DNA of 64,000 nucleotides from positions 124,001 to 188,000 of the IMG/VR virus record IMGVR_UViG_3300032116_000001, one strand, 5' to 3'. The notes under the pieces are model-generated. The model made no database searches and was not told the DNA's origin. It was given only the letters and a program-made list of their open reading frames with translations. The translations under genes were made by a program, and so were the position numbers. Positions 5,977 through 61,488 of the stretch are shown piece by piece. The first letter of the stretch is position 1; each line of letters starts with the position of its first letter.

Positions 5977-6417
5977 GTGTGGTATCGACTTTCGCAAAAA
6001 ACTTTAGGTATTGGCGGCGGGGCATTAAAGTCCTCGCCGTCAAATGATTCTGTATTGCCAGCAGAACAACATGCCAAAATGTGGGATGTATTGGTTAATC
6101 AAACAGATCATATCGGAAACAGAAAGGGCGAGCCAAATGAAACCACTGGTGATCAAGGTGCCATAAACGAGGGGCAAGCAACTCAAGGCACAGAAATGAG
6201 AAGAGTTTCGCCTTATCATAGCAATCCTGAACACACAACTCTTGAAGAGCAACTTGAAACCGCAAGGCAACAAAACGTAAATAACGATCCGATAGCAATG
6301 ACGCAAAACAATTTCGGAACTGGAGAAATGCTAATAAGAGGAGTGCCCCAGTATAGTTCTGGCAAAGGGTGGGTAGGCTTTCAAGGAAATAACCCGTCTG
6401 CGATAACCCTGGTTTAA
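5977..6417 (+). CDS. Hypothetical protein beginning MWYRLSQ (start re-assigned from 5941 to GTG 5977)
   Basis: GTG at 5977 follows aaaggtg, removes the overlap with the upstream gene and gives the shared N-terminal tag. Confidence 0.7.
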   Translation: MWYRLSQKTLGIGGGALKSSPSNDSVLPAEQHAKMWDVLVNQTDHIGNRKGEPNETTGDQGAINEGQATQGTEMRRVSPYHSNPEHTTLEEQLETARQQNVNNDPIAMTQNNFGTGEMLIRGVPQYSSGKGWVGFQGNNPSAITLV

Positions 6418-6438
6418 AGGTTTTTTTCTTTTATGCAG

Positions 6439-6472
6439 ACAATATCTTAAGGAAAGAGTCTTAAGATATTGT
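6439..6472. promoter_or_regulatory. 13-bp perfect inverted repeat directly followed by TATAAT, upstream of the portal
   Basis: acaatatcttaag / gaaagagt / cttaagatattgt, overlapping the start of tataat; could be a terminator or an operator. Confidence 0.4.
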
Positions 6473-6538
6473 ATAATTGTGCAATATGTCTTTAAAGACA
6501 TAAGTGAGGTTTTGCTTTTGGCCAATCAAGAATCAATA

Positions 6539-8941
6539 ATGGAAGCCCCAACATTAGCCAGTGTTATGAGGGTTGCCGCGCAAACTGTGTCTGGCGAGAG
6601 AGTGATCGGTGCAACAACAAAAAGAGACACAGGCCAGCAACATGTTGCGTCAAGAATTACGTCTGGGATCGGAGCCAGCGTACACAAAGGCGTGCGGGAA
6701 GCGCAGGTTTCACCCAACAGCATTACTACGGCACCCAACTTTTATAGCCCGTTTTTAACACCAAGGGCTTATCAAGTTCCAAACGCACGCAAAGAAGTGT
6801 ATCTTTGGGCAAACTGGTGGCGAAATAATGAACCAAAAGTTGCCGCGGCTATAAATTTTTACAAACTTTTTCCTTTTTCTGGATGGAAACTTGAATGTTC
6901 AAGTTCATATGTCAAAGACTATTTTGAGAAATTAATCCAAAAGCTTAATTTCCAAAAATGGCTTCCAGAAATCAGTGGCGTATATCATCTTTTTGGAGAC
7001 TGCTTTGTACTTGCAACTCTTGAGTGCGAACACTGTGAGGGAAGCATGATTGATAAAAACACGGGAGAAGCCTGCAGCCATGATGGGGCAACATGGGCCA
7101 GCCTGACTATTTTAAACCCCGACAGTATTCAGATTAGGCCTGGTATATCTGGTCAGGAAAATTCATATTTTTATCAACCAACCGAAAGAGACATTCGATT
7201 AATCAATGAACGTCAATCACAACAATTCTATCATCAAATACCAGATAATGTAAAGAGACTTATCAAAAAGGGAGAGCCATTCCTTCTTAATTCCATATGC
7301 ATAGAGCACTTTAAATTTGGCTCTAGCCCTTGGGAAGATTACGGAACGCCAATGATTAGGTCGCTCTTTCCGACACTGGCTTATAAAGATAAATTAAGAA
7401 ATGCTCAATGGCTTATTGCTGAACGACATATTCTTCCCGTTAAAGTTGTAAAAGTTGGATCAGACAACAGGCCAGCAAGCCAATCTGATATTGATAGCGT
7501 GCAAGAAGAATTGGCCGCTGTTGCAAATGACCCCAATTTGACTTTAGTCACTCATAATGCATTCGATTTTGATTATGTGGGAGCATCAGGAAAAGTTCTG
7601 CAGCTTACAAATGAATTTGAGCTTATAGATCAAGAGATTCTTGATGGCGTAATGCTAAATAAGGCACTATTAAATGGTGAAGGCCCAACATATGGAAATG
7701 CCCAGGTTGGCCTCTTGGCAATGAAACAGCGCTTAGAAACATTCCGAAATGAAGTTGCAAGATGGATTGAAGAAAAATTATTTAAACCAGTCGCAGAATG
7801 GAACGGCTTTGTCATTGAGGGCGAAAGAGGACAAGATGAATTAGTTTATCCCAAAATTGTTTTTAGTGATTTAGAGCTTAAGGACAAAACTGGGATTTTG
7901 CAAATGTTTGTCACTGCTAATAGCAATGGTGTTATTTCAAATCAGTCATTAATTGAAGAATTTGGCCTTAATCCAGACCAAGAAATTGAAAGACTCCGTG
8001 AGGAGCAGGGCGCTAACTTTGTGCAAAACCCAGCAATAGGAAACACAGACCTTGGTAATGGTTTTGCAGGCGGCATGGGTGGAGGATTCGGCGGGATGGC
8101 CCCATCAATGCCTGCGCCAGGCGGAATGCCAGCGGCTCCTGGTATTGATGGTATGGGTGGAATGCCGCCTATTGGAGCAAGAGATTACCGAGAAAATTAT
8201 CGCCTGGCATCTGGTATAATGAACGACATTTATCGTGAAAAAATTGGCATTCATACTGCAGAAATTCAGACGAGAACAGCATCAAAAACAATTAAGTCTC
8301 AGGCTCATTACGAATTTTTAAGCACAATAAAACCTGTTTCTGGTCGGGGATTGGCTGGGGAACTTCCAGAGGAATATGATGGCTTTGGCAATGTCCTAGA
8401 GCCACAGTTGTTAGGAGGACCATTCTGTTTTCCTCTTAATTCATCGGCAATTCATGAGCTAAGAAACATAATCGCAGAAGCCTCTAATGATCCTGCAGGC
8501 AAAATTGCTTTAGCCTCGGCTGAAGAAGCAAAAAATAGAATAACCATTGGCAAGAAGGGTGGCAGAAATGAAGAGAAACAAGTTAATTTGTTCACAAGCA
8601 TTGAGAAGAAACTTTACTATCTTTTGACATCTTTAAACTTACCTTTTGCGATTTATGCTCAATATAGTATGGGGCAAACAAGTGATTACACCCTGGATGC
8701 CGCAATACCATCGTTGAGGCTAGGCTTTGAGGCAGATGGTGAAATTTGGCACAATAGTCCAGATAAAATTGCAAGAGATAAAAGAAGAGATATGGAGCTA
8801 GCAGCAAATGGCTGGACAATTCTTCGCTTTACAGACAAAGAGTTAAATGATCGCCAAAACGAAGTTGCCCAGGTAATTTTACAAGCTATCCGAAAAGTTG
8901 CAGCACCAGGTCAAGATAATCAAGGGAATATCATTCTCTAG
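6539..8941 (+). CDS. Portal protein with C-terminal DUF559/Vsr-like endonuclease domain (ORF open from GTG 6479; ATG 6539 preferred)
   Basis: Portal-like core (EPKVAAAINFYKLFPFSGWKL, GTPMIRSLFPTLAYKDKLR, ILPVKVVKVG), position before the protease, C-terminal YTLDAAIP..FEADGEIWH..RD..L..NGWTILRF. Confidence 0.85.
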   Translation: MEAPTLASVMRVAAQTVSGERVIGATTKRDTGQQHVASRITSGIGASVHKGVREAQVSPNSITTAPNFYSPFLTPRAYQVPNARKEVYLWANWWRNNEPKVAAAINFYKLFPFSGWKLECSSSYVKDYFEKLIQKLNFQKWLPEISGVYHLFGDCFVLATLECEHCEGSMIDKNTGEACSHDGATWASLTILNPDSIQIRPGISGQENSYFYQPTERDIRLINERQSQQFYHQIPDNVKRLIKKGEPFLLNSICIEHFKFGSSPWEDYGTPMIRSLFPTLAYKDKLRNAQWLIAERHILPVKVVKVGSDNRPASQSDIDSVQEELAAVANDPNLTLVTHNAFDFDYVGASGKVLQLTNEFELIDQEILDGVMLNKALLNGEGPTYGNAQVGLLAMKQRLETFRNEVARWIEEKLFKPVAEWNGFVIEGERGQDELVYPKIVFSDLELKDKTGILQMFVTANSNGVISNQSLIEEFGLNPDQEIERLREEQGANFVQNPAIGNTDLGNGFAGGMGGGFGGMAPSMPAPGGMPAAPGIDGMGGMPPIGARDYRENYRLASGIMNDIYREKIGIHTAEIQTRTASKTIKSQAHYEFLSTIKPVSGRGLAGELPEEYDGFGNVLEPQLLGGPFCFPLNSSAIHELRNIIAEASNDPAGKIALASAEEAKNRITIGKKGGRNEEKQVNLFTSIEKKLYYLLTSLNLPFAIYAQYSMGQTSDYTLDAAIPSLRLGFEADGEIWHNSPDKIARDKRRDMELAANGWTILRFTDKELNDRQNEVAQVILQAIRKVAAPGQDNQGNIIL

Positions 8942-8990: not shown

Positions 8991-9015
8991 AGGTGCAAGC
9001 CTGAAAATAACAGAA
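8991..9015 (+). promoter_or_regulatory. AGG-N19-GAA late-promoter-like motif, first of a tandem pair before the protease
   Basis: AGG tgcaagcctgaaaataaca GAA. Confidence 0.65.
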
Positions 9016-9040
9016 AGGCATATAAAGCGTTGGTTTTGAA
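9016..9040 (+). promoter_or_regulatory. AGG-N19-GAA motif, second of the tandem pair
   Basis: AGG catataaagcgttggtttt GAA, directly abutting the first copy. Confidence 0.65.
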
Positions 9041-9086: not shown

Positions 9087-12000
9087 TTGATGGAGCGGCG
9101 AGCCAAGTGCGGCATCATAAATATTCATAGCTTTCTCAACGAGGAAGATCGCAATGCGGCTCGTGATCACATGATGCGAACTGCTTCTGTTCAATTAAGA
9201 GAAGCAGCTAAAATTGGTTTGCAGTCTTTATATGCTGATCCAGAAGAAGTTTTAAAGAAATACAAAGACTTTGACATAGTTAAAGCAATGCAGGCAAGAA
9301 AAGGTGCCAAGCTTCTGTGGGTCAGGGCCAGGGCGATTGACGCTGATACAGTAAATGCCAATGGCGATTATTTCTCAAGGGCCGAGTTACTTAAGGAAGT
9401 TGAAGTTAAGGGCGAAAAGATACCTGCGTATAAAACATTTGAAGGTGTCCCGATTTATACAAATCACAAAAACGATGACATCGAGCAGGCAAAGGGTATG
9501 GTCGTTTATGCAGAATGGGACGAGGAACAAAATTGTGTATTCTGTACATTCTTCGTTGACGAAGAAGCGTACCCTGATATAGCAAGAAATATTCGAACTG
9601 GTGTAATCCATGATGTTTCTATGGGCTGTCAGGTGCAAAGTGGCGAGTGCTCTAAATGCGGCAATATAGCCACTATTGAAAAAGAATATTGTGATTGTCT
9701 CAAGAAATACAAAGGCAAAAAACACCCTGTAACAGGTGAAAAAATTTATGAAAAAAACTTTGGATTAAAGTTTATTGAATTAAGTTGTGTTGGTGACGGG
9801 GCATTTGAAACCTGCGAAATAGAAGAGCTTTATGACGTTGATGAAATTCTTGATGCTGCTATGAGCACAGAAAGACGTGCAAATTCTATTTATTCAAGCA
9901 TAGTTCTTGCCAGCACATTAATGCCAGACAACACTGTTGATAAGCATTATTTTGAGGAATCTTTAAGAGAAATTTCTGCCGCTGCTCAATCTGCAGTACG
10001 ATTAGCCCAATCTGCAGGCACCCTGGTTGGTGGGCAGTTGATGGCAGGCGAGGGCGCGGACCAAAATGCAACAGTTTCGGCAGTATTAAACGCTCTGGGA
10101 ATTGATCCAAGGTCAGGGTTAAATATTCTTGATTTACTTAATCTTGCCTTAAACTTTTTAGAAGTTGCGGTTATGAATCTTTTTGCAAGAAAAGATAATG
10201 TTGACTTGACTCATGTTGGAAAAATTACAAAAAGCATGGCCGATCTTCAAAACACCATGCAAGACATGATTGATGATGGCGTAGATACTGGTGTAAGAAA
10301 TCAACAGCCAATTAATCAAGGTCAAATTGCAAATCAGCCACCAATGGCAGCTCCACAAATGCCCCAGGGTGGTCAACAAATTAATCCTGGCGCTGGGCAG
10401 CAACCCATGAATTGGAATAACTTGGGAGATGTTGGAAGATCAATAAGCCCAATGTCTATGCCTGGGGGAATTGGTGGTGGCGTTGTGCTTTCATCTTCTG
10501 ATCCACAAATGATAATGTGGGCGTCAAAGGATGGAAGTCGCGAAGTTTACGCCAGCGTAAAAGCTTCGCAAAACAATCAATCTAGTAGATTGACAAACAA
10601 TATAGTAGAATTTGGACAAGCTCTTGTTGGCTTTAAAAATTCGCTTGGCATAGACCAAAAATCAATTGCCAATTTTAACAAAAACAATCAATTCGTGCGT
10701 GCTGCCCAAGGGCGCAACACAAATCAAAAGACCAACGCGCCTGTTACTGCAGGGGCGGGAGAATACCAAACTATGGATCATTTCGCAAAAATCGCTCAAG
10801 AGCAGCGCAAGAAATACGCTTTTACCGCCCATGTAGATGTTACTATGGAGGATGCCAGCGGCAACCGCGTTGTTCTTTCAACTGACGGAAATATTTCTGG
10901 ATTTGTCAAGGGTGTTAAAGCCCAGTGGGAGCCAGAACTTACTGAATCTCAAATCGCTCGCATGGAAAATGGCGAGGGCACAAGAGTTGCATCTGAGTTG
11001 CTTGCAAGTTTTGCAAAGCAAGTTAAAACAGCTGGATGGAAGCCTTATACCGAAACAGATGTCAAGGAAAACGAACTTGAGCCACATCGCAACGGGACAA
11101 AGATTGAAACAAGAGAAGAATCTTTGGAAAAAATGAGGTCCAACAACAAGGGTGAAAAAACCATGCAAGAAGCACTTGGTGGTGATTATTACTCCAATAG
11201 AAGAGACGCCGACGACGATGTTAAAGAAAACATGCTTGATGAAAGCGCAGGACTTTACGGCAGGGCCGTAAATGAGTCATTTAATGAAGTAAAGGATCGC
11301 TTGCTTGAAGATGCACGGCGTGGACATCCCGAAAATACACTTGAAGAACAACTTTCTGAGTGCAGAGAAAATCATGGAACCGCAGAAGTTGAAGTGGTAA
11401 TGACAATGGTGAAAGAAGCAATGGCCAAGGCCGTTGTTGCTTCAAGAGTTTTGCCAGAAGAAATTGTTTCCGTGGCTGAAACGCTGGCTTCGCGCAATGA
11501 TCTGGAAGAACTCGTTGCTCTTGCAAGCTTGGGTATGAATACCAGAAAGGCTTATGCTAATCGAAGAGCATTCCATAAAATTTCTGCTGTATTAATGGCA
11601 CCTGATGCTGCTCTGTTGCATTCGCTTGGTGAGATTGTGAGCCGTGAAATAACTGCATCTGATGTAAGTGAGGCAATTCGAGTTGCTGCATCTATGAAAG
11701 ACGTGGCAACTACTGCTGTCGCAAACATGGTTGAAGCCATGAGAGACGGCGAAATGGTTGAGGCAGCGCCTGTAAACATTAAGGTTAGCAGAGAAGAAAG
11801 ACTCAAAACAGCTCTTGCCTCTTCTGGGCACGAATCATTTAATAAAGAGCACTTAAAGGCTGTTATTTCAGCAATGGTGATGGCAAGTGAAGAAACACAA
11901 GCTACACCCGAAGAGGTTGTTGATTCACTCAAGGGACTTAATTTGGCCTCAAAAATCAACGAAGCCCGAACAGCTTCGGCGACGGATGGAAGATTGACTG

Positions 12001-13367
12001 CAAGAGCAAGAAAACAATTCTGGGGTAATGAAAGATTCGCATCTAAGTCAACGGTCTCTGATGCAACTGTTGGATGGATTGCTGATTACGCAACCAACTT
12101 TGATTACAGTACGCAGGCGGTGGCTCAGGCTGTGGAAAAACTTACCAATGATCCCAGGGTGGCAACGCACTTGATTACTAAGGCCATTGATGCCAAGCTC
12201 CAAGGCGAAAGAATGGCAGGTGTTACGGTTACAGAAGAAAAGTCAGAAATCATTCGCTTTGTGTGCAGGGCAGAAGACCTCGGAGGTATTGACCCCAAGG
12301 ACGAAGCTTTTGAAGACACTTTTAGACAAAAGGCTATTGAAATTCTAACCGCTCAAGGATTTACAGTTGATCCAGGAACATTTAGCTTTACTGATCTTTC
12401 AGTAACAGAAAACGGGGACATTACTGCGTCGGTTCAAACCAGAGTCACAAAGACTTTTAAAGCAGACGCCGAATTACCTGCTCAGCCCCTGGAAAATATG
12501 GACACAATGTCCGTGGCCCCAGAAGTTATTGAGCCAACAGTAGTAATGTCTGAAGCAGCAAGAGAAGCCAGACTTGCAAGGCGGCAGCAAATTTTAAGCA
12601 AGATTGCACAAGCCGCCCCTGGCATGATGCCACCAGCTCAAGAGATGGGCACGCCAGGCATGGATGCTTCGGGTATGGGAATGGCAGGCGCTGAAGGTCT
12701 TGGCGTTGCCGCCTTGTCGGTGCCGACGGCAGCGGGTGACAATCCTGTTGAAGAACCCGCTGATACTGATGCAATGCCAGAACCTGGCAATCCAAAGCCA
12801 ATTGGTACTATCTGCCCCATATGTGGCAGCGATGATGTTGATCTTGCTAACAGCGAGGGTGAGTGCAACTCGTGTGGCACGCGCTATAAAGTTATGCAAA
12901 GTATTGAAATCATTAGCATTGGTGGTGGTGAGCCCGTTAATAATGATTCGCCTGAGGCAGAAATGGATGGCATGGCGTCACCCGATACCATGGGTCTTGG
13001 AGAGGACACTGGTCTGGGCGCTGCCACTGCGCCCGCTCCTATGGGTTCACCCGACATGAACAACCCAGGAGGCATGCCGCCTGCTCAAGGAATGGGAGCC
13101 ATGGCCAGCGCAGGCGCAGCTTTGTATCGAATTGCTGCCACAGTTGACTCTGATGTGTATCTCAAAACAACTATGCCAAACTTTAGCCGAACTGCTGAAA
13201 AGCAATTGCCCATCGGCATGGTATGTCCAAAGTGCGGCAGCAGAGAGGCTCAAAAAGTCAAGAACTCTACGTTCTGTTATGATTGTGGAAACTATGCTAT
13301 TAGCAGCGTGAAGCCAAATGATTCTGATCCCACAAAGATCGATGTTTCAATAACCTGGTTGGCATAA
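9087..13367 (+). CDS. Prohead (capsid maturation) serine protease with long scaffold-like C-terminal region and zinc ribbons
   Basis: NANGDYF, PIYTNH (His), DVSMGC (Ser), FIELSCV motifs of HK97/assemblin-fold prohead proteases; CSKC, CPIC..CNSC, CPKC..CYDC; located between portal and capsid. Confidence 0.85.
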   Translation: MMERRAKCGIINIHSFLNEEDRNAARDHMMRTASVQLREAAKIGLQSLYADPEEVLKKYKDFDIVKAMQARKGAKLLWVRARAIDADTVNANGDYFSRAELLKEVEVKGEKIPAYKTFEGVPIYTNHKNDDIEQAKGMVVYAEWDEEQNCVFCTFFVDEEAYPDIARNIRTGVIHDVSMGCQVQSGECSKCGNIATIEKEYCDCLKKYKGKKHPVTGEKIYEKNFGLKFIELSCVGDGAFETCEIEELYDVDEILDAAMSTERRANSIYSSIVLASTLMPDNTVDKHYFEESLREISAAAQSAVRLAQSAGTLVGGQLMAGEGADQNATVSAVLNALGIDPRSGLNILDLLNLALNFLEVAVMNLFARKDNVDLTHVGKITKSMADLQNTMQDMIDDGVDTGVRNQQPINQGQIANQPPMAAPQMPQGGQQINPGAGQQPMNWNNLGDVGRSISPMSMPGGIGGGVVLSSSDPQMIMWASKDGSREVYASVKASQNNQSSRLTNNIVEFGQALVGFKNSLGIDQKSIANFNKNNQFVRAAQGRNTNQKTNAPVTAGAGEYQTMDHFAKIAQEQRKKYAFTAHVDVTMEDASGNRVVLSTDGNISGFVKGVKAQWEPELTESQIARMENGEGTRVASELLASFAKQVKTAGWKPYTETDVKENELEPHRNGTKIETREESLEKMRSNNKGEKTMQEALGGDYYSNRRDADDDVKENMLDESAGLYGRAVNESFNEVKDRLLEDARRGHPENTLEEQLSECRENHGTAEVEVVMTMVKEAMAKAVVASRVLPEEIVSVAETLASRNDLEELVALASLGMNTRKAYANRRAFHKISAVLMAPDAALLHSLGEIVSREITASDVSEAIRVAASMKDVATTAVANMVEAMRDGEMVEAAPVNIKVSREERLKTALASSGHESFNKEHLKAVISAMVMASEETQATPEEVVDSLKGLNLASKINEARTASATDGRLTARARKQFWGNERFASKSTVSDATVGWIADYATNFDYSTQAVAQAVEKLTNDPRVATHLITKAIDAKLQGERMAGVTVTEEKSEIIRFVCRAEDLGGIDPKDEAFEDTFRQKAIEILTAQGFTVDPGTFSFTDLSVTENGDITASVQTRVTKTFKADAELPAQPLENMDTMSVAPEVIEPTVVMSEAAREARLARRQQILSKIAQAAPGMMPPAQEMGTPGMDASGMGMAGAEGLGVAALSVPTAAGDNPVEEPADTDAMPEPGNPKPIGTICPICGSDDVDLANSEGECNSCGTRYKVMQSIEIISIGGGEPVNNDSPEAEMDGMASPDTMGLGEDTGLGAATAPAPMGSPDMNNPGGMPPAQGMGAMASAGAALYRIAATVDSDVYLKTTMPNFSRTAEKQLPIGMVCPKCGSREAQKVKNSTFCYDCGNYAISSVKPNDSDPTKIDVSITWLA

Positions 13368-13382
13368 TTAAGCAAGAGTAGG

Positions 13383-15985: not shown

Positions 15986-16840
15986 ATGAGCATGATCAAG
16001 AGAAATACAAACGAGCAGCGCGAAGCCATTATTGCAATGGCTATGGAAACCCCCGAGGGTAGAACTGCGCTTGCACAAGCGATGGTTGAGCCAATCAAAA
16101 CATCGTTGATGTACCAAGCCATCGGGCGAAAGCTTCTGATGGTTGACGAGCTGCCAAACGGCGCTCTGGCCCGATACGAGCGCGACGTAGCTGTTAAGAG
16201 CTACGTGATTCCGAAGCGTGGTTCCGTGCCCGACGCCCTCGTGGAAGCTGAAGAGCTGATCGTTCCTACGATTGAGCTTGCTGCCCACCCCACGATCAGA
16301 CTGAACGAAATCCGCGCCCGCCGATTCTACATCGTGGACCGCGCACAAGTTCGTGCCAAGGACTCGCTCCAGCGACAGGAAGACGTTGAAGTCTTTAAGG
16401 TCATCAACGCTGCAATCCCAACTGACCACAGCATCTCCGTTTCAGGTACCCTGCAGGCTGAAAACATCAACCTGGCCCTTACCCTGATCGAAGAGCACGA
16501 ACTGATCGGTGCCAAGATTGTTCTCGCTCCACAGCGATACAAGGACATTCGGGGCTGGGGCAAGGAAGTGTACGATGAGGCAACTCAGCGCGACATCCTG
16601 ATGACTGGTCTGTACGGCCACATCTACAGTGCTGACATTCACGTTAGCACCATGGTTCCTAAGAACGCGGTCTACGTGCTTGCACCTGCCCAGTTCGTTG
16701 GTGCCATGCCAGTGAAGCAAGACATCACTGTTCTGCCCGCAGACGATCCTAAGCGACTCCGCCTCGGCTGGGTGGTCTATGAAGAAATCGGCTTTGCTGT
16801 CATCAATGATTACGCTTTGAGCCGCGTGACTGTTGCTTAA
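15986..16840 (+). CDS. Major capsid protein, HK97 fold, short form without a delta domain
   Basis: 284 aa; E-loop and P-domain-like pattern (RKLLMVDELPNGALARYERD, IVDRAQVRAKDSLQRQED, GWVVYEEIGFAV); aaggag SD; strongest codon bias in the window; followed by a terminator. Confidence 0.88.
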   Translation: MSMIKRNTNEQREAIIAMAMETPEGRTALAQAMVEPIKTSLMYQAIGRKLLMVDELPNGALARYERDVAVKSYVIPKRGSVPDALVEAEELIVPTIELAAHPTIRLNEIRARRFYIVDRAQVRAKDSLQRQEDVEVFKVINAAIPTDHSISVSGTLQAENINLALTLIEEHELIGAKIVLAPQRYKDIRGWGKEVYDEATQRDILMTGLYGHIYSADIHVSTMVPKNAVYVLAPAQFVGAMPVKQDITVLPADDPKRLRLGWVVYEEIGFAVINDYALSRVTVA

Positions 16841-18404: not shown

Positions 18405-18971
18405 ATGGTCATTAATCTTGATAATCTATACGTGACTCAGAGCAGTATTAGGAATTGGGAGCGAGTGGTTCGAATGATTGATTTTGTTCGGAATGGGGGA
18501 ATTTTCACGAATGAATTCATTCAGCAATATCACAATGATGAGTCTTCAATAAATCATCAGCCGATGAAAATTAAAATCATGCCCGATGATAAGCATTTTC
18601 TACACGATGGGCATCACAGGGCTATTGCCTTGTGGATTGCTGGCCGAAAAGAGCTGTATCCCGAAGAATACACAACGCACAATTGGCCGTCGTATGAATC
18701 TTTTTCGGAAGTTAATTTAAGTGTTGGGTGGGTGACTCCTTTGGATATAAGAGAAGAAATTAGATATCCAGATGTTGTTCCTTTTAAGGAAAGGGTTTTA
18801 ATGCTGCCATGTGAAGATCAATTAGATTATATTATGGCTCACAAATCAGAATATTGCCATCCCCGAAATGGCATAAATTATGTTAGTGATTTGGTCAAGT
18901 GTGTTCTTGATGGGCAATGTTGCACTAGTTCCGAAGGATGCCCTTGTAAAACAGATGAATTAATAAATTAA
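18405..18971 (+). CDS. ParB/Srx-like N-terminal domain protein
   Basis: KHFLHDGHHRAIAL matches the ParB-like DGHHR motif. Confidence 0.6.
   Translation: MVINLDNLYVTQSSIRNWERVVRMIDFVRNGGIFTNEFIQQYHNDESSINHQPMKIKIMPDDKHFLHDGHHRAIALWIAGRKELYPEEYTTHNWPSYESFSEVNLSVGWVTPLDIREEIRYPDVVPFKERVLMLPCEDQLDYIMAHKSEYCHPRNGINYVSDLVKCVLDGQCCTSSEGCPCKTDELIN
18935..18959 (+). promoter_or_regulatory. AGG-N19-GAA motif 11 nt before the ART-like gene start
   Basis: AGG atgcccttgtaaaacagat GAA. Confidence 0.55.
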
Positions 18972-20182
18972 TGCCTTTTTTCCGCAGAATATCTCAAAAT
19001 GATAAAGCCCAACCGAGTTTATTTTTTGATGCATGGGCAAACAATGATCTGGTGACAGATGATTTTAATCCTGAATACCCCAAGGTGCTTTATCATGGGA
19101 CCACGCATGGGTTTAATGCCTTTGACCCCCAAAGCCCGCACTTAAGCCCAGAGGGTTTCTGGGGCAAGGGATTTTATTTTAGCGATGATTACCAAGATGT
19201 AAATACTAATTATGCAACATTTGATAGCCCAGATGCAACAAATAAAATGGAAAACATGGCAGAAAGAATCGTTGCAAATGAAAATTTTTCAAGCTTTGAT
19301 TTAGATAAATACAAAAAATCTCATCCTCAGTTTTTTGATCAAAATGGCAACATAACGGATGAATATGAATTGGCAAAAGTAATTGCAAGTGAAAAAACTT
19401 TTGGGGCGGGGCCGCAAGTTATGCCAGTTTATCTTAAGATGAAAAATCCCCTAAACACAACTGAAGAAAATCCTACAGTCTTTGATATTCATTATGAATA
19501 TGATGAATACGGTGACCCAATTGGGGAGCCAAGTGGAAATTTTTTCGATCTTAAGGATGCCGTTATAGACACTGCGAATGACTATGGGCTGAACGGTGAT
19601 GAATTTTGGGAGTCAATGGAACATTTTTTAGCAATCAAGGCATATGATGGCTATCTCACGGCAAATGATGTTGTGCAAACACTAAAGGAACAAGATATGC
19701 TTTATTATCTTGACTCTGATGAAAACGGAAACAACATGGCAAGCGAGTTTATTAAGGCTATTTTTCAGAGACTTGGTTATGATGGTGTAATAATGAGTGC
19801 ATGGCAGCATTTTGGAGGCGATAAAAACGCTATGCGCGGCATCAATCCTGATACTAAGCATTATATAACATGGGAACCAACAAACATTAAGTCGGCGATT
19901 GGAAACAATGGTCTTTACGACCCCGAAAACCCAGTAATTACAGCAAATATGCATTTAGATAGCGAAAAAATTGTTAAATATGCCTCGTATTTAGATTTGC
20001 AAGAAAGATTTTGTGAGGCCGATGAGATGGATTTGAAGATTTTAAGAATCTCAAAATCTCTAAATGGAGTAAACGCAAAGGCAGATAAAATTTCCCGAAA
20101 GTTCCTTGGCATGTACACAATACATAATATATCTGGCTCAAGCCCGAGAGCGGCAGTATTGGTTTATAGGAGGGAGCGGTGA
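18971..20182 (+). CDS. ADP-ribosyltransferase-like (ART-PolyVal type) protein; native C-terminus replaced by IS sequence
   Basis: VLYHGT..FNAF, GFYFS, VMPVYLKMKNP, GYDGVI, IKSAIGNNGLYDPENP; the last ~16-18 codons are read from the IS left end. Confidence 0.7.
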   Translation: MPFFRRISQNDKAQPSLFFDAWANNDLVTDDFNPEYPKVLYHGTTHGFNAFDPQSPHLSPEGFWGKGFYFSDDYQDVNTNYATFDSPDATNKMENMAERIVANENFSSFDLDKYKKSHPQFFDQNGNITDEYELAKVIASEKTFGAGPQVMPVYLKMKNPLNTTEENPTVFDIHYEYDEYGDPIGEPSGNFFDLKDAVIDTANDYGLNGDEFWESMEHFLAIKAYDGYLTANDVVQTLKEQDMLYYLDSDENGNNMASEFIKAIFQRLGYDGVIMSAWQHFGGDKNAMRGINPDTKHYITWEPTNIKSAIGNNGLYDPENPVITANMHLDSEKIVKYASYLDLQERFCEADEMDLKILRISKSLNGVNAKADKISRKFLGMYTIHNISGSSPRAAVLVYRRER

Positions 20183-21630: not shown

Positions 21631-22029
21631 TTAGTCCCAATCATAAGTTTCTTTTTCTGATTCCGTATATGAAATTCTCGTTAGAGCCTCACCGTACCGA
21701 TTGGGTCCTGGCAAAAACCTAACAGAAGCATATTCAACATATTTGTTGTTGTCGTCGGGTATTATTTCTGCTTTCACGAGTGCGTCAATGATCGGCTTGC
21801 AAACATTGTCAACGTCTTGTTGTTTTGACCATCCGCGGCCCCCAAGAACAAAAATTTCAATTCTAATTGGGAATGCCTCTGCGGGCGAAAGCTTTTCTTG
21901 AATTTCTGGAACTACTTTTTCCAACCATTGTCTGTATTTTTTTGATTTGGACATTCGACCGCGGGCAGTCGGCACATACATATTATTGGCCGAAAACGGG
22001 GGACCAATGCTACACGAAACATTTCGCAT
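21631..22029 (-). CDS. rusA: RusA-like Holliday junction resolvase
   Basis: PPFSANNMY and DVDNVCKPIIDALVKAEIIPDD match the RusA DxDNxxKxxxDAL motif. Confidence 0.9.
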   Translation of the reverse strand: MRNVSCSIGPPFSANNMYVPTARGRMSKSKKYRQWLEKVVPEIQEKLSPAEAFPIRIEIFVLGGRGWSKQQDVDNVCKPIIDALVKAEIIPDDNNKYVEYASVRFLPGPNRYGEALTRISYTESEKETYDWD

Positions 22030-22047: not shown

Positions 22048-22293
22048 TTAATCTCGTATTGTAGTGTAGTTAAGTTTTTCTTCGCCAGCTTTTTCGCAAA
22101 TAAATTTTACAAATTGCTCTCCATATGGTAAGCATGTTGGCTTAAGTTCAGCACAATGTTCTTCTAAAAATGATTTTCCTTTTTTGCTTCTACTCCAGAA
22201 TCTGACTTGAATTACATCATCACCGTCCTGATACTCTCTGATTTCAAAATCAATTTTTGCATCTTTTGGCCGATTGGAAAATCTATACCACAT
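22048..22293 (-). CDS. Small hypothetical protein beginning MWYRFSN (start re-assigned from 22473)
   Basis: ATG at 22293 lies 1 nt after the upstream stop and removes a ~180-nt same-strand overlap. Confidence 0.7.
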   Translation of the reverse strand: MWYRFSNRPKDAKIDFEIREYQDGDDVIQVRFWSRSKKGKSFLEEHCAELKPTCLPYGEQFVKFICEKAGEEKLNYTTIRD

Positions 22294-23550: not shown

Positions 23551-23575
23551 TTCCATTTAAGACTGAGGAAAACCT
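23551..23575 (-). promoter_or_regulatory. AGG-N19-GAA motif before 23516
   Basis: - strand AGG ttttcctcagtcttaaatg GAA. Confidence 0.6.
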
Positions 23576-23631
23576 GTTTTATGTTTAATAAAGAGTATTT
23601 AAATCTTAACAAAATTAATCATATTTTTCCA

Positions 23632-23656
23632 AGGCTCTCAAGGTTTTAAATAAGAA
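23632..23656 (+). promoter_or_regulatory. AGG-N19-GAA motif before the pyruvyltransferase gene
   Basis: AGG ctctcaaggttttaaataa GAA. Confidence 0.6.
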
Positions 23657-27326: not shown

Positions 27327-27351
27327 AGGGAGAATTTTAAAAAACAATGAA
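27327..27351 (+). promoter_or_regulatory. AGG-N19-GAA motif before 27406
   Basis: AGG gagaattttaaaaaacaat GAA. Confidence 0.6.
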
Positions 27352-27405: not shown

Positions 27406-27837
27406 ATGAATAACCGCACCGTTGTCGCCAGATTAATTGAAATTGCAAATATACTAGATTCCCATAATTTAGTAAATGAATCCGATGAAATTACACGAAT
27501 TGCTCAAGATTTTTCATCTTCTCCGTCTTTTGATTATTTGCCAGGCACTAACTCTTACGACATTGAGGGTCCAGATGATTATCGAGCAGATGACATGATG
27601 ATTCGCGGCGATCAATTTGAGTCAGAAAATGAACTTATGATGGAGCTTGCAAGAGCCGAAGCTTTTGATCGAATAAATCAAATTGTAAATAATCCCAACC
27701 CAAGTGAAAAAGAAATCGAAGAATATAATAGACTGCTTCAATTGTTGGATGGAAGTCGATCCGAAGAAGATTTTAAACAAAATATTCTTGATAGCGGTGC
27801 AAATATTATTGATGATGAAGACATTTTTAATAATTAA
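27406..27837 (+). CDS. Acidic hypothetical protein with N-terminal helical tag
   Basis: MNNRTVVARLIEIANILDSHNLVNESDEITRIAQ; agga SD. Confidence 0.75.
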   Translation: MNNRTVVARLIEIANILDSHNLVNESDEITRIAQDFSSSPSFDYLPGTNSYDIEGPDDYRADDMMIRGDQFESENELMMELARAEAFDRINQIVNNPNPSEKEIEEYNRLLQLLDGSRSEEDFKQNILDSGANIIDDEDIFNN

Positions 27838-40602: not shown

Positions 40603-41297
40603 TATTTATTTACCCCTTGCTGATTCGCATCATCTCGTCTTAGGTATTCAGGAGTGTATTCTACCCCCTGTCCAGTGGGCAGCAGCCCCATGGCTTCTAT
40701 GTCTTTTCTTCCAATCATAGTAAATGCATTAATTTTTTCAAGATCGGTGCCTGAAGCCGCTCCCGACGTTATAAATCTATGAAAGTCAACATCTATGTCT
40801 TGGAAGCCCCCTGATTTGGCGCAGTAGATTTCCACAGCATCGGGAATTGATGTCCCTTTTGCTAATTTGTTGATTTCTTGAGCCTGTCGCTTACCCACAT
40901 TCGCAATCATAACAAGCCCATTATTTTTGTGCGCAATTTCACACGCTTGGCTAAGGGAAAGATTTGGAGGCAATGAATCTTTAATATTAAAAGCAATAAT
41001 ATGAGCCTTGTCTGTGCATGTGTATTCTTGGCCTGGGACCACATGCAAATCTAAGTTCTGCTCTCTGCATAGTTGCTGAGCACGCCAGCCAGCTTGCGGG
41101 CCATAATTATTCACCACGCCGATGACATCAAGTCCCTTGACTATAGCGGCTGTTAAAATAGATTTTATGGATGAATCCAAGTCATTTTGATTGGTAAAAT
41201 TTTCAACACGATCAATATACACGCGCAAATCCACCCGCAACACATGTTTGCGGAGGGCTATACACTCTCGTGCGGTGGAATACCATCTATTAAACAC
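40602..41297 (-). CDS. PHP-fold protein lacking most metal-binding histidines
   Basis: VDLRVY, GLDVIGVVNN, VVPGQE, HIIAFN, DAVEI follow the PHP motif order; N-terminus MFNRWYSTAR. Confidence 0.65.
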   Translation of the reverse strand: MFNRWYSTARECIALRKHVLRVDLRVYIDRVENFTNQNDLDSSIKSILTAAIVKGLDVIGVVNNYGPQAGWRAQQLCREQNLDLHVVPGQEYTCTDKAHIIAFNIKDSLPPNLSLSQACEIAHKNNGLVMIANVGKRQAQEINKLAKGTSIPDAVEIYCAKSGGFQDIDVDFHRFITSGAASGTDLEKINAFTMIGRKDIEAMGLLPTGQGVEYTPEYLRRDDANQQGVNK

Positions 41298-41319
41298 TTC
41301 AGAAACTCCTATTGGTATT

Positions 41320-41344
41320 TTCTGAAGAAAATTAACTTAAACCT
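41320..41344 (-). promoter_or_regulatory. AGG-N19-GAA motif heading the neck/tail operon
   Basis: - strand AGG tttaagttaattttcttca GAA. Confidence 0.65.
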
Positions 41345-41973: not shown

Positions 41974-42324
41974 TTAGTTTTTACCTTTGGTTTCGCTTTT
42001 CTTCCAGCTAAAGCCATCAATATCAACCCCAAGGTCTTTAACTGAGTTCATTATAGCGTGCATAATTTCTGCCTCGGAAACCCCCTCGGGCACCTTAAAA
42101 GTTACACTTGTTGTATGAGTTTCGCGATCATCTTTAGGCGGAGCTTCTGTGATTTTTGCAAAGGGTTGTATCATCGGATTGTAAGGCATGTCATGCATGA
42201 TGTTGTCATCGCCACTTGATAAATACTGAGCTATTCGGTGAAGCTCCTTAGACATCGGGCTTCCTTTTTTATCCAGTGAATCGGCGACGTTTGTAATTCT
42301 ATTTGCAATATTTTTGTTGCTCAT
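41974..42324 (-). CDS. Small hypothetical protein with N-terminal helical tag
   Basis: MSNKNIANRITNVADSLDKKGSPMSKELHRIAQ; aaagga SD. Confidence 0.75.
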   Translation of the reverse strand: MSNKNIANRITNVADSLDKKGSPMSKELHRIAQYLSSGDDNIMHDMPYNPMIQPFAKITEAPPKDDRETHTTSVTFKVPEGVSEAEIMHAIMNSVKDLGVDIDGFSWKKSETKGKN

Positions 42325-59247: not shown

Positions 59248-59283
59248 CACAATTCGCTTCGCGCAGACGTATTAGAATTGTCC

Positions 59284-59308
59284 AGGTAAAATTTTGGAAT
59301 ATATGGAA
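59284..59308 (+). promoter_or_regulatory. AGG-N19-GAA motif 11 nt before the cca start
   Basis: AGG taaaattttggaatatatg GAA. Confidence 0.65.
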
Positions 59309-59319
59309 AAATAAAATTC

Positions 59320-61488
59320 ATGTGGTATCGATTTGCTCAAAAAAAATCAAAAAACGAAGGCGTATTTTATCACCCTTTGGACATTTCTTTTAGTTCAACA
59401 CTAAGGGGAATATTTGATTTTCTGAGACAAAAAAATTACAAAGCATTAATTGTTGGCGGATCGGTAAGAGATGCTTTGCAAGGCATAAGCCCCAAAGATA
59501 TCGACATTGAGGTTTATGGAATATCATATGATGAATTGGCAAAACTTTTGTCTAACTTTGGCAAAATAGACATTGTTGGGAAAACATTTGGTGTAATTAA
59601 GCTTTCAGACAATGAAGGCAATGACTTTGATTTTTCTATTCCCCGAAGAGAAAATAAAACAGGAGTGGGCCATAAAGACTTTTCTGTAATTTTTGACCCC
59701 AGTATTAATCCCAAGGAGGCCGCGGCTCGCAGAGATTTTACAATTAATTCGCTGGCTTACGACCCATTAACAGAAGAAGTGCATGATTACTTTGGTGGCA
59801 TTGAAGACCTTCAAAACAAAGTTCTGCGACATACAAGCAATGCATTCGCAGAGGACCCACTTAGGGTTTTGCGCGGAATGCAATTTGCCACAAGATTTAA
59901 TATGAATTTGGCCCCTGAAACTGCGAATATTATTAGGGAAGAAGTTTCGGATGATGAGCACTACCATTCTTTGGCTAAAGAAAGAATCTCAGAAGAATTT
60001 ATGAAAATGGCCACAAAAGGCAAATATCCTGGCAGGGCGATTCAATATTTAAAGGACACGGGATGGATTAGATTTTTTCCTCAGCTTGAGGCAATAATTG
60101 GCGTGCCACAAGAATATGAGTGGCACCCAGAAGGCTGGTCTCATTCATTAATTTCTAAAAAAAGCATTAATAACCAAGGTCAGAAACTTCCAATTGAAAA
60201 TTTGACTCGCGAATTTCTTAATAGTGCCATTCGTGAATATCGGGCCAATCAACAAAAAACATTCAGAAGAAATTCCTCTTCACGTCAATCAAGAAGTATT
60301 TTGGCAGATAGCACCTTAAAAGAAAAACAAAACATTGCTTTTGAGATTCCAATAACAACCTTGATGTCAGTGATGGGGGATTCATTGGAAGAACACGCTG
60401 TTGTTCAAAATATGATTTACTCTGTTGCATCTTATGCGGCGGGCTCAATTTTGGGAGATCACAATAGCGCAAATGTGGGGTTTGCTAATCGCTCTAGCGA
60501 TAACGCGCTTGATGCTGTTATAGATAATGCTGTATTTTCTGTTGATAATGACAGAATTTTATTCAATTTTGATTTGATATTTCGCACAAATAAAATTAAT
60601 GATGCACAAACATTGAGCACAAAAGATGTGCATTTTATCACAATCGGTGACGTTGGCACTCATACTTCACACGTTATGGACGCGGCTGCTGAAATTGCGG
60701 ACAGAGATGGTTTACAAGGGGATGAACGTGCCGCCCTGATTTTTGCTGCCCTTGGGCATGACCTTGCGAAAGCCACTACCACCGAACAAAGAGAAAAAGG
60801 TGGAAAAATCAGATGGACGGCTCATGGCCACGAGGAAGCATCTGTTCCAGTGGCAGAAGAACTTTTGCAATCAATAGGCATTAAGCAAGATATTATCAAG
60901 CGCGTACTACCGATTATTGAGCGGCATCTTGAACACATTAGGTTTAATCCAGCGACATCGTCTATTGCTCAAATTAGGCAATTAGCAAATAGCCTACACC
61001 CTGCTAATATTGAAGATTTGGCAAGATTAATGGAAGCAGACTCTAGTGGCCGACCACCATTGCCCAAGGGCCTCCCAGATCAAGCCAGACTAATGCTCAA
61101 TTTGGCCCGAGAAGACGGCTCCAATGCTGGCCGACCAAATCCCCTAATACAGGGCAGAGATGTGATGCCTTATTATCAAAACAGGGGCGGCAAGCATATT
61201 GGCGAAGTGGTGCAAGATGCTTATAACGCGCAAATTAAAGGAAGAATTTCCACTGTGGAACAAGCAAGGGAGTGGTTAGATAACTATCTTCGTGGTCGCA
61301 CATCTTTACTAAGAGGAGACGATATACTACCATATTTTAACAACAATGGCGGCCCACATATTGCTGAAATTCTAAAGCAGGCCTGGACCGCGCAACAAGC
61401 TGGGGAATTTGATACTCAAGAATCCGCAAGAAGCTGGCTGTCTAATTACATGCAAAACAAATCAAATAAGCCAGATGCGACTGTATAA
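59320..61488 (+). CDS. cca: CCA-adding tRNA nucleotidyltransferase with HD domain, 171-aa insertion and duplicated tail domain
   Basis: VGGSVRD, DIDIEV, RRDFTIN, EDPLRVLR, ERISEE, HPEG..DVGTHT, ALGHDLAK. Confidence 0.92.
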   Translation: MWYRFAQKKSKNEGVFYHPLDISFSSTLRGIFDFLRQKNYKALIVGGSVRDALQGISPKDIDIEVYGISYDELAKLLSNFGKIDIVGKTFGVIKLSDNEGNDFDFSIPRRENKTGVGHKDFSVIFDPSINPKEAAARRDFTINSLAYDPLTEEVHDYFGGIEDLQNKVLRHTSNAFAEDPLRVLRGMQFATRFNMNLAPETANIIREEVSDDEHYHSLAKERISEEFMKMATKGKYPGRAIQYLKDTGWIRFFPQLEAIIGVPQEYEWHPEGWSHSLISKKSINNQGQKLPIENLTREFLNSAIREYRANQQKTFRRNSSSRQSRSILADSTLKEKQNIAFEIPITTLMSVMGDSLEEHAVVQNMIYSVASYAAGSILGDHNSANVGFANRSSDNALDAVIDNAVFSVDNDRILFNFDLIFRTNKINDAQTLSTKDVHFITIGDVGTHTSHVMDAAAEIADRDGLQGDERAALIFAALGHDLAKATTTEQREKGGKIRWTAHGHEEASVPVAEELLQSIGIKQDIIKRVLPIIERHLEHIRFNPATSSIAQIRQLANSLHPANIEDLARLMEADSSGRPPLPKGLPDQARLMLNLAREDGSNAGRPNPLIQGRDVMPYYQNRGGKHIGEVVQDAYNAQIKGRISTVEQAREWLDNYLRGRTSLLRGDDILPYFNNNGGPHIAEILKQAWTAQQAGEFDTQESARSWLSNYMQNKSNKPDATV

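What the first reader, a model, noticed from the sequence alone, without database searches (positions are those of the whole stretch)
5977..59340. Candidate head-cargo sorting system: shared MWYR(F/L)(A/S) N-terminal tag on unrelated proteins
Seen: three unrelated genes start with almost the same peptide: MWYRLSQ (5977, head operon), MWYRFSN (22293, - strand) and MWYRFAQ (59320, CCA enzyme). Looser versions start the PHP-like protein (MFNRWYSTAR, 41297) and the ART-like protein (MPFFRRISQ, 18971). Codons differ between copies (cga ctt tcg / aga ttt tcc / cga ttt gct), so conservation is at the peptide level. Two copies only appear once start codons are re-assigned. All tagged genes outside the head operon lie behind an AGG-N19-GAA motif, directly or through an operon. 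Established: T4 internal proteins use a short N-terminal capsid-targeting sequence removed by the prohead protease. Inference: this phage addresses enzymes (CCA, ART, PHP-like) into the prohead with a short tag ending at an Ala/Ser-Gln-type cleavage site, for injection at infection. I know of no description of this tag, but cannot check.
Basis: partly seen in the sequence, partly recalled or inferred. Interest (0 to 1): 0.85.

Follow-up and report, generated by a model that had tools for sequence, protein, structure and literature searches.

The report
Shared N-terminal tag in huge phages
A clade of uncultured huge phages puts the same 7-9-residue peptide (MWY-R/K-hydrophobic-A/S-Q) at the very start of more than twenty unrelated proteins, most likely as an address label that loads enzymes into the phage head for delivery into the host, though no experiment has shown this.

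Summary
WYR[FL][SA] occurs three times in all six frames of the window, each time directly after a start codon (0.09 expected). The window is part of a 379-kb IMG/VR phage whose portal is distantly phage-G-like. In relatives, MWY[RK] starts at least 20 unrelated families: the gene upstream of the portal (all 48 other loci), CCA enzymes (31 of 68 long phage-type hits, 0 of 52 cellular-type), ART-PolyVal, GNAT, NUDIX, M23 peptidase, PcfJ-like, AAA_33 kinase, HTH proteins and unknowns. They often lie in runs of up to six consecutive tagged genes. Codons vary synonymously, so selection acts on the peptide. Both "looser" copies (ART, PHP-like) are confirmed as variants by their orthologs.

Indirect evidence favours head targeting. 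Head-operon proteins, including the prohead protease fusion (MY[RK]VAKGG), carry the same core. One relative has its tagged CCA gene directly upstream of the portal. In the AlphaFold model the tag lies outside the confident CCA fold. One cargo domain occurs behind either MWYR[FL]AQ or a 30-residue helical leader ending RIAQ, so the junction falls after A-Q.

Packaging, cleavage and the promoter link remain untested. No description was found in the searched literature.

The parts
5977..5997 (+). Canonical tag (M)WYRLSQ, GTG start, of the gene just upstream of the portal
   Evidence: Orthologs in all 48 other portal loci start MWY[RK] or MSWYK.
5977..6417 (+). Family-0 gene (146 aa): tag, then a GGG stretch, then a largely low-complexity acidic protein with conserved SPYH / LEEQLE / C-terminal PSNxT motifs. 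Probably a head-core or scaffold-like protein.
   Evidence: No Pfam or PHROG hit.
22273..22293 (-). Canonical tag MWYRFSN
22048..22293 (-). 81-aa tagged protein of unknown function, next to a RusA gene (21631-22029)
   Evidence: Public gene call P0121 is identical. Homologs P0122 and P0123 are 81-82 aa and start MWYRASG / MWYRVAS. RusA.
59320..59340 (+). Canonical tag MWYRFAQ
59320..61488 (+). Tagged CCA-adding enzyme (PolyA_pol head domain 43-170, HD domain 446-560). The tag and about 12 further residues form an N-terminal extension that cellular homologs lack.
   Evidence: AlphaFold2 model has pLDDT 88, but residues 2-9 are below 50.
18971..18997 (+). Variant tag MPFFRRISQ on the ART-PolyVal protein (gene 18971-20182)
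   Evidence: Pfam ART-PolyVal 3.8e-19. Closest orthologs start MSVFRRTSQ, MPKFRRVSQ, MSRLRRVSQ; farther ones MWYKRAQ, MWYKFAQ, MWYKLAQQ, all before QPSLFF. 30% identity to the tagged L077 ART.
41268..41297 (-). Offset tag MFNRWYSTAR on the PHP-like protein (gene 40602-41297), next to a head-tail-adaptor-like gene (40108-40602)
   Evidence: Homologs start MWYTNF, MWYTKF, VWYSGF, MSWYKLGK, MPWYREAK, MVRNWY, MERSWY. Adaptor.
9087..13367 (+). Prohead protease domain (residues 90-247, phage G gp19-like) fused to about 1180 further residues. In relatives its N-terminus is MY[RK]VAKGG, the tag core without W. The window copy is degenerate (MMERRAKCG).
2522..3382 (+). Head-operon protein with a conserved N-terminus MS[KR]F[RK]KVS[ED] (window: MSKFLRKVSD), the same flavour as the ART variant tag
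3388..4374 (+). Head-operon protein starting MKGLRTAQEFGGG. Orthologs start MNKLSQ, MKKLSQ, MYRISQ, MRKYSQ: the tag core without the aromatic pair.
27406..27507 (+). Second leader type: a ~34-residue predicted helical module ending ...DEITRIAQ, on a 143-aa protein (27406-27837)
42226..42324 (-). Second leader type ending ...KELHRIAQ, on a 116-aa protein (41974-42324)
6479..8941 (+). Portal protein (context), with a C-terminal DUF559/REase-like domain
15986..16840 (+). Major capsid protein (context), 48% identical to phage G gp27

Best explanation
MWY-[RK]-hydrophobic-[AS]-Q (7 residues, or 9 as in MWYKQVLAQ) is a modular N-terminal leader peptide used by a large clade of uncultured huge phages. 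It marks proteins for incorporation into the assembling head.

Proposed mechanism:
1. The leader sits on a flexible stretch outside the folded cargo domain.
2. It docks onto a component of the prohead interior (scaffold/core, protease fusion, portal or the inner capsid face). Which one is unknown.
3. Structural core proteins, the prohead protease and a variable arsenal of enzymes are thereby trapped inside the shell. The enzymes include ART, GNAT, NUDIX, CCA/tRNA-repair, kinase, peptidoglycan hydrolases, PcfJ-like and small proteins.
4. These proteins leave with the DNA at infection.
5. The leader may be clipped off after the conserved [AS]-Q by the prohead protease, as the T4 capsid-targeting sequence is clipped after I-A-E.

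Shown here: the tag exists; it is selected at the peptide level; it is N-terminal; it lies outside the cargo fold; it is interchangeable with another leader at the A-Q junction; and it is shared between head-module proteins and accessory enzymes.

Inferred: the destination (head), ejection into the host, and cleavage.
For: 1. Non-random and N-terminal. 3 of 3 WYR[FL][SA] in the window follow a start codon. WY is the commonest dipeptide after a candidate start in the related loci (71 of 1239 ORFs), although its internal frequency is 0.37 per 1000.
2. Peptide-level selection. Tyr is TAT 45 / TAC 22. Position 4 is K (AAA 20, AAG 9) or R (AGA 17, CGA 7, CGG 1).
3. Many unrelated carriers. 26 sequence clusters, about 23 credible, carry it. 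They include ART-PolyVal, GNAT, NUDIX, M23, PcfJ, AAA_33 and HTH proteins. They often form runs of 3-6 consecutive tagged genes.
4. An add-on, not part of a fold. 0 of 52 cellular-type CCA enzymes have it, against 40 of 68 long phage-type ones. AlphaFold2 gives residues 2-9 pLDDT below 50 in an otherwise confident model of pLDDT 88. A profile of family 0 matches the CCA proteins only over residues 1-10.
5. Link to the head.
   - The tagged family-0 gene lies directly upstream of the portal in all portal loci.
   - In L033 the tagged CCA gene occupies that slot.
   - The prohead-protease fusion starts MY[RK]VAKGG across the clade.
   - Other head-operon proteins keep MS[KR]F[RK]KVSE or M.K[LY]SQ N-termini at only about 40% overall identity.
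   - The PHP-like gene abuts a head-tail adaptor gene.
6. Modularity and junction. The same cargo domain follows MWYR[FL]AQ in L063 and L089, but a 26-residue helical module plus RIAQ in L077. The alignment starts at R-x-A-Q.
7. Precedent. The T4 capsid-targeting sequence MKTYQEFIAE is a ~10-residue N-terminal tag that is cleaved once and carries foreign proteins into the head (PMC8442874). SPN3US head and ejection proteins lose N-terminal propeptides to the prohead protease (PMC10052503).
Against: - There is no direct evidence that any tagged protein is in a virion or that the tag is cleaved. No cultured relative or virion proteome was found.
- The runs of tagged genes are more than 10 kb from the portal and are interspersed with replication-type genes.
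- A packaged CCA-adding enzyme has no precedent that I know of.
- M23 and GH108 hydrolases could simply be endolysins.
- Phage G, the nearest cultured relative by portal, lacks MWY upstream of its portal.
- The receptor is unidentified.
- P1 = Gln would be unusual for T4/phiKZ-type prohead proteases, which cut after Glu.
Confidence: 0.55

Rival explanations
1. The tag is a docking peptide for a destination other than the capsid. Candidates are the tail-tube lumen (as for payloads of contractile injection systems), a phage-built intracellular compartment or condensate, or a hub protein that gathers these enzymes in the infected cell.
For: The tag is modular and lies outside the fold. Tagged genes cluster in payload-like runs away from the portal. 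The PHP-like gene lies in the neck/tail operon. The related helical module also occurs at C-termini of 800-930-aa proteins, as expected for a protein-protein docking unit.
Against: The same core is on the prohead protease fusion and on several genes of the portal-MCP operon. Family 0, and in one phage the CCA gene, sit directly at the portal.
Confidence: 0.17
2. The tag controls protein fate rather than location. It could be a degron for timed destruction by a Clp/Lon-type protease, perhaps after removal of Met to expose Trp. Or it could be a chaperone-recruiting N-terminus, like the T4 gp23 N-terminus that directs proteins to GroEL.
For: W, Y and R are ideal ClpS N-degron residues (established knowledge). 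T4 head-protein N-termini are reported to recruit chaperonin (reference 29 in PMC10052503). Accessory takeover enzymes are plausible targets of timed removal.
Against: Met before Trp is not removed by methionine aminopeptidase (established specificity). Functional-looking variants have 1-4 residues before WY (MFNRWY, MVRNWY, MKRESQWY) or no aromatic pair at all (MNKLSQ, MSKFRKVSE), which does not fit a strict N-end rule. The conserved [AS]-Q end and the swap with a 30-residue helical leader are not explained.
Confidence: 0.12
3. The conservation is at the nucleic-acid level. It would be a translation-initiation or regulatory RNA element (for example an operator for a translational repressor, or a leaderless-mRNA signal), or a recombination cassette that moves genes around.
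For: TGG has no synonym, so part of the DNA identity is forced. First genes of some runs lie 5-6 nt after an AGAATA[AT]A promoter-like box and lack a clear Shine-Dalgarno sequence. The window copies lie behind AGG-N19-GAA.
Against: Synonymous and conservative changes are frequent: TAT/TAC 45:22, and five codons for R/K. Upstream DNA is not conserved between families. Tagged genes inside operons, with overlapping stop/start codons, keep the tag. Offset variants keep the peptide, not the position relative to AUG.
Confidence: 0.04
4. Chance resemblance or a start-codon artefact.
For: Two of the three window copies need re-assigned starts.
Against. The motif is far above chance and conserved in orthologs, and public gene calls use the same starts.
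Confidence: 0.01

Closest known systems
Bacteriophage T4 capsid-targeting sequence (CTS, MKTYQEFIAE) of internal proteins IPI-III (Mullaney and Black 1996, as summarised in PMC8442874)
   Same: About 10 residues, strictly N-terminal, and shared by otherwise different proteins. It ends in hydrophobic-Ala-Glu/Gln. A prohead protease gene lies in the same head operon. Small tagged proteins such as the 81-aa one recall IPI.
   Different: There is no sequence homology beyond the loose pattern aromatic...hydrophobic-A-[EQ]. Here more than 20 families carry it, including large enzymes such as the CCA enzyme. The putative P1 residue is Gln, not Glu. Packaging and cleavage are untested here. The phages are phage-G-like, not T4-like.
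N-terminal propeptides of head and ejection proteins in phiKZ/SPN3US-type giant phages (PMC10052503, PMC5694885)
   Same: Giant phages that load many proteins into the head. N-terminal propeptides are removed by the prohead protease at a short motif.
   Different: Those propeptides are 20-254 residues long and not a shared sequence tag. The motif there is A-X-E.
Polyvalent proteins of phages and conjugative elements (Iyer et al. 2017; from my own knowledge, not checked in the paper library)
   Same: The domain repertoire overlaps: ART-PolyVal, M23 peptidase, PcfJ-like, ParB-like nuclease, metallopeptidase-like. In both cases delivery with the DNA is presumed.
   Different: There the domains are fused into one giant polypeptide anchored by a MuF-like head domain. 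Here each domain is a separate gene with its own short leader.
N-terminal packaging signals of payloads of extracellular contractile injection systems such as PVC (from my own knowledge)
   Same: An N-terminal loading signal on unrelated effectors, with payload genes clustered in a row.
   Different: Those signals are about 50 disordered residues without a crisp motif, and they load a tail-tube lumen in capsid-less particles.
Encapsulin cargo-loading peptides (from my own knowledge)
   Same: A short linear peptide plus a flexible linker targets unrelated enzymes to the interior of an HK97-fold shell.
   Different: They are usually C-terminal, not cleaved, and belong to cellular nanocompartments rather than virions.

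Membership tests
T4-type capsid-targeting sequence system | Short N-terminal peptide shared by otherwise unrelated proteins | tested here: met
T4-type capsid-targeting sequence system | Sequence relatedness to the T4 CTS MKTYQEFIAE | tested here: not met
   Only a loose pattern resemblance (aromatic, then hydrophobic-A-E/Q). There is no alignable homology. CTS sequence from PMC8442874.
T4-type capsid-targeting sequence system | Prohead protease encoded with the head genes | tested here: met
   Residues 90-247 of 9087-13367 are 37% identical to phage G gp19 (E 3e-32); PHROG head maturation protease.
T4-type capsid-targeting sequence system | Tag removed by the prohead protease at a conserved site | not testable with these tools
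   The conserved [AS]-Q boundary and a domain swap at that point are compatible with cleavage, but they are not evidence of it.
T4-type capsid-targeting sequence system | Tagged proteins present in virions; tag sufficient to load a foreign protein | not testable with these tools
   No cultured relative or proteome was found.
Polyvalent proteins | Many effector domains fused in one very large polypeptide with a head-anchoring (MuF-type) domain | tested here: not met
   ART, M23, PcfJ, GNAT and NUDIX are separate genes of 65-930 aa. The 1426-aa protein has a protease domain, not a recognised MuF domain.
ClpS-type N-degron | Destabilising residue (L/F/W/Y) exposed at position 1 | tested here: not met
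   Trp is at position 2 behind a Met that aminopeptidase should retain. Offset variants have 1-4 residues before WY. Later processing cannot be excluded.
Sec/Tat signal peptides | Hydrophobic h-region of at least 10 residues after the N-terminal motif | tested here: not met
   Tags are followed by polar, Gly-rich or charged linkers.
eCIS/PVC payload signal | About 50-residue N-terminal disordered signal; particle without capsid | tested here: not met
   The tag is 7-9 residues. The locus encodes a portal and MCP.

The most novel reading that the evidence does not exclude
Uncultured huge phages of this clade possess a general, sequence-defined protein-loading code. One short leader (MWY[RK]-x-[AS]-Q) and one about 30 residues long (helical hairpin ending [RK]IAQ) are each sufficient to load arbitrary enzymes into the capsid. 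The leaders are removed at A-Q by the head protease. This lets the phage inject a swappable arsenal at the moment of DNA entry, including tRNA 3'-end repair (CCA enzyme), ADP-ribosylation, acetylation, Nudix and kinase activities. That would be the first case of a packaged tRNA-repair enzyme, and a ready-made tag for engineering cargo-carrying phage heads.
Probability: 0.4. Interest if true: 0.88.

Novelty: new variant of a known kind. Interest (0 to 1): 0.8.

Why it matters
If the tag is a head-loading signal, reading the first seven codons would list the injected proteome of a whole clade of uncultured 100-400-kb phages. That would turn dozens of hypothetical proteins into candidate first-minute host-takeover or counter-defence effectors.

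It would show that the T4 targeting-peptide principle has arisen, or diverged beyond recognition, in a distant lineage and on a much larger scale. It would suggest that tRNA repair can be delivered pre-made. It would also provide a 7-residue portable tag for packaging foreign proteins.

Even if the destination turns out to be different, a strictly N-terminal, clade-wide peptide shared by more than 20 families is a new handle on huge-phage cell biology. It is directly testable with tag-reporter fusions or viral-fraction metaproteomics.

Tried and rejected
- A scan of IMG/VR with the 1432-aa protein upstream of the CCA gene found only the source contig.
- Phage G, the nearest cultured phage by portal, has no MWY gene at its portal. 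The phage G multi-omics paper gave no information on gp12/gp13.
- tblastn of a tagged PcfJ-like protein against 50,697 phage records found no close relative, so there is no cultured model.
- Full-text search for 'MWYR' found nothing about phages. Searches on capsid targeting returned only T4 and SPN3US work.
- Promoter idea. AGG-N19-GAA is enriched in intergenic DNA of the window but absent upstream of tagged genes in relatives. An AGAATA[AT]A box seen before some tagged runs is not specific: 5 tagged against 39 other ORFs. No timing class could be assigned.
- ESM Atlas gave only sub-threshold leads: JAB-like toxin for family 0, LPD28 for the 81-aa protein. The family-0 sequences show no JAB metal motif, so that lead was dropped.
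- A PDB sequence search with the protease domain found nothing.
- No tRNA or Rfam family occurs in the window.
- The apparent ORF-free stretch 61.5-64 kb is an ordinary gene that runs off the window, not stop-codon recoding.
- Fusion of the CCA protein to family-0 sequence was tested and rejected. Only residues 1-10 match.
- A tagged CCA gene in a 1.36-Mb 'Armatimonadetes' contig lies in phage-like context. It was uninformative.
Full report
**What is in the window**

The window is part of IMGVR_UViG_3300032116_000001, a 378,848-bp phage contig.

Its left third is a head operon:
- several proteins of unknown function;
- the 146-aa gene at 5977;
- the portal, 6479-8941 (PHROG portal 1.6e-32; 30% identical to phage G gp14);
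- a 1426-aa protein whose residues 90-247 match the phage G gp19 head-maturation protease (37% identity, E 3e-32);
- the major capsid protein, 15986-16840 (48% identical to phage G gp27);
- an HNH endonuclease;
- a ParB-like nuclease;
- an ART-PolyVal protein at 18971;
- a TnpB gene.

This annotation rests.

A long minus-strand operon holds a head-tail-adaptor-like gene (40108-40602), the PHP-like gene, a T4 Rnl1-like RNA ligase and very large unknown proteins. The CCA-adding enzyme at 59320 has a PolyA_pol head domain and an HD domain.

**Check of the observation**

The three canonical copies are exactly as described.
- WYR[FL][SA] occurs three times in all six reading frames, each time immediately after ATG or GTG.
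- 0.09 occurrences are expected, and no start-preceded copy appeared in 200 random sequences.
Its core occurs only twice inside 18,975 residues.
- The re-assigned starts are right. The 81-aa product is called with that start in public data, and its two homologs start MWYRASG and MWYRVAS.

**The tag is conserved in orthologs and absent from non-phage homologs**

In 48 other IMG/VR loci with a related portal (48-75% identity), the gene directly upstream of the portal always starts MWY[RK]. Examples are MWYRLAQQ, MWYRIKKAQ, MWYKQVLAQ and MWYRVVKAS; two loci have MSWYKLAK. A Gly run usually follows.

Among the 120 best CCA-enzyme hits in a 5.8-billion-protein database:
- 31 of the 68 long (over 500 aa) proteins start [MV]WY, and 40 have WY or WW within the first 25 residues;
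- none of the 52 cellular-type enzymes of 459-500 aa has it, and these start directly at the first helix of the fold.

An AlphaFold2 model of the window enzyme is confident overall (pLDDT 88, pTM 0.87), but residues 2-9 score below 50. A profile of the portal-upstream family matches the CCA proteins only over residues 1-10. So what is shared is a tag, not a domain.

**The two looser copies are real variants**

ART protein. The closest orthologs start MSVFRRTSQ, MPKFRRVSQ or MSRLRRVSQ. Slightly farther ones start MWYKRAQ, MWYKFAQ or MWYVLAQ. More than 25 others start MWY[KR]LAQQ followed by a 35-residue Pro/Lys/Glu-rich linker. All of these precede the same conserved QPSLFF motif. Unrelated ART-PolyVal proteins have no such start.

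PHP-like protein. Homologs start MWYTNF, MWYTKF, VWYSGF, MSWYKLGK, MPWYREAK, MVRNWY or MERSWY. The aromatic pair can therefore sit one to four residues in from the N-terminus.

**How widespread it is**

Two DNA-pattern scans of IMG/VR were run, for ATG-TGG-TAT followed by R or K, a hydrophobic residue, A/S and Q. Every fetched locus was then scanned for a start codon followed by WY. This gave 117 distinct tagged gene starts in 26 sequence clusters, about 23 of them credible.

Pfam identifies the following among them:
- ART-PolyVal
- GNAT acetyltransferases
- NUDIX
- M23 peptidase
- PcfJ-like
- AAA_33 kinase
- HTH proteins

One 650-aa protein with an HExxH motif had no Pfam match, and many clusters are unknown.

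About 20 of the 48 hits of the first pattern scan were chance matches in short ORFs. This shows the scan was not circular.

Tagged genes often stand in runs: six consecutive in L059, five of 17 ORFs in L063, four each in L089 and L100. In all related loci together, WY is the commonest dipeptide after a candidate start codon (71 of 1239 ORFs). Yet it is among the rarest inside proteins, at 0.37 per 1000. After removing the genes that defined the loci, roughly 30 remain where about one is expected.

**Peptide or nucleic acid?**

In the copies not selected by the DNA pattern, Tyr is TAT 45 times and TAC 22 times. Position 4 is Lys (AAA 20, AAG 9) or Arg (AGA 17, CGA 7, CGG 1). Later positions vary within a residue class. 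Upstream DNA differs between families. Tagged genes inside operons keep the tag. Selection therefore acts on the peptide.

The consensus is M-W-Y-[RK]-hydrophobic-[AS]-Q. A longer form is M-W-Y-[RK]-x-hydrophobic-hydrophobic-[AS]-[QS].

**Evidence on what the tag does**

First, the same core recurs on proteins of the head operon.
- The protease fusion after the portal starts MY[RK]VAKGG in some twenty distinct loci. The window copy is degenerate.
- The 286-aa protein at 2522 keeps MS[KR]F[RK]KVS[ED] at about 43% overall identity.
- The 328-aa protein at 3388 starts MKGLRTAQEFGGG here, and MNKLSQ, MKKLSQ or MYRISQ elsewhere.

A prohead protease must by its function be built into the prohead, so its carrying the core is the strongest pointer to the destination.

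Second, in the divergent relative L033 the tagged CCA gene itself lies directly upstream of the portal, in the slot of the small tagged protein.

Third, the leader is a module with a defined end. One cargo domain of about 125 residues follows MWYR[FL]AQ in L063 and L089. In L077 it follows a 26-residue segment plus RIAQ. The 52%-identical alignment begins at R-x-A-Q.

That longer leader (consensus LLKIA..LD..G.Y.LADKI.RIAQ) heads other proteins too:
- two in the window (27406 and 41974);
- a ~152-aa head-operon protein in nearly all portal loci;
- the copy just upstream of the window (L012:14-448);
- a GH108 lysozyme (leader only weakly matched, E 2.4 for the L089 homolog).

Fourth, the cargo list (ART, M23, PcfJ-like) overlaps the domains of polyvalent proteins and recalls T4 Alt, which travel with the DNA. 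This point rests on my own knowledge.

**Comparison with known systems**

The closest precedent is the T4 capsid-targeting sequence MKTYQEFIAE. It is a ~10-residue N-terminal tag on internal proteins, is cleaved once by the prohead protease, and can carry foreign proteins into the head (PMC8442874). Giant phages of the SPN3US/phiKZ type remove N-terminal propeptides of 20-254 residues from head and ejection proteins at A-X-E (PMC10052503).

The present tag shares the logic and even the ending (hydrophobic-Ala-Gln against Ile-Ala-Glu). It is not alignable to the T4 tag. It sits in phage-G-like rather than T4-like phages, and it marks far more and far more diverse proteins.

No paper in the searched library mentions it.

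**Limits**

- Nothing here demonstrates packaging, ejection or cleavage.
- The tagged runs are not next to the portal and are mixed with replication-type genes.
- The hydrolases could be ordinary endolysins.
- The receptor is unknown.
- The promoter link could not be established.
- Only ±10-kb pieces of the related genomes could be read, so no complete inventory exists.

My confidences are about 0.99 that the tag is a real, selected N-terminal peptide, 0.55 that it is a head-loading signal, and lower that it is cleaved at A-Q.

Noticed in passing
window 27406-27507 (+), 42226-42324 (-); L012:14-448; window ~630-719 (C-terminus of the protein ending at 722); L092:10170-12971: A second terminal module of about 30 residues (LLKIA..LD..G.Y.LADKI.RIAQ, probably a helical hairpin). 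It heads many small proteins and a GH108 lysozyme, where the match is weak. Without the final AQ, it ends several 800-930-aa proteins. It is interchangeable with the MWY tag on one cargo domain.
   Followed up: partly
window 9087-13367: The prohead protease domain (phage G gp19-like) is fused to about 1180 further residues of unknown function. Relatives have 1200-1800-aa versions.
   Followed up: partly
window 6479-8941 (residues 706-804): The portal protein carries a C-terminal DUF559 / MTES_1575 restriction-endonuclease-like domain. The full length is conserved in relatives.
   Followed up: no
window 17044-18378 and 20287-21456: An HNH endonuclease and a TnpB (IS605 OrfB) gene lie inside the head operon, flanking the ParB-like nuclease and ART genes.
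   Followed up: no
window 40602-41297: The PHP-like protein has R-V-Y where a homolog (P0188) keeps the H-x-H metal motif. The metal site may be lost.
   Followed up: no
window 42481-43698 and 59320-61488; L124:913-1377: An RNA-repair theme: a T4 Rnl1-like RNA ligase, the CCA/HD enzyme and, in a relative, a tagged AAA_33 kinase. No tRNA gene occurs in the window, although tagged runs in relatives often start right after a tRNA gene and terminator.
   Followed up: partly
L051:10001-12802; P0008, P0029, P0030: Some tagged CCA enzymes carry a LAGLIDADG / intein-like insertion of about 300 residues in the nucleotidyltransferase domain.
   Followed up: no
L053 (phage G) 4284-17783: Several phage G head-module proteins start with a basic-hydrophobic motif: gp12 MSRKRRLISQ, gp13 MKRLISK, gp17 LKRLIKK, gp9 LTRLKKI, gp5 LSRIKKI, gp20 MSKKISRLKK. 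These may be an analogue of the tag core in the only cultured megaphage.
   Followed up: no
window 8991-9040, 23551-23656, 27327-27351, 41313-41337, 59284-59308: AGG-N19-GAA is enriched in intergenic DNA: 12 of 32 matches lie in about 4% of the sequence. It may be a phage promoter. It is not seen in that form in relatives.
   Followed up: partly
window 61557-64000: An apparently ORF-free stretch is one large gene that runs off the window end. It is a homolog of L051:13267-16392. The three in-frame TGA codons lie upstream of its start, so there is no recoding.
   Followed up: yes
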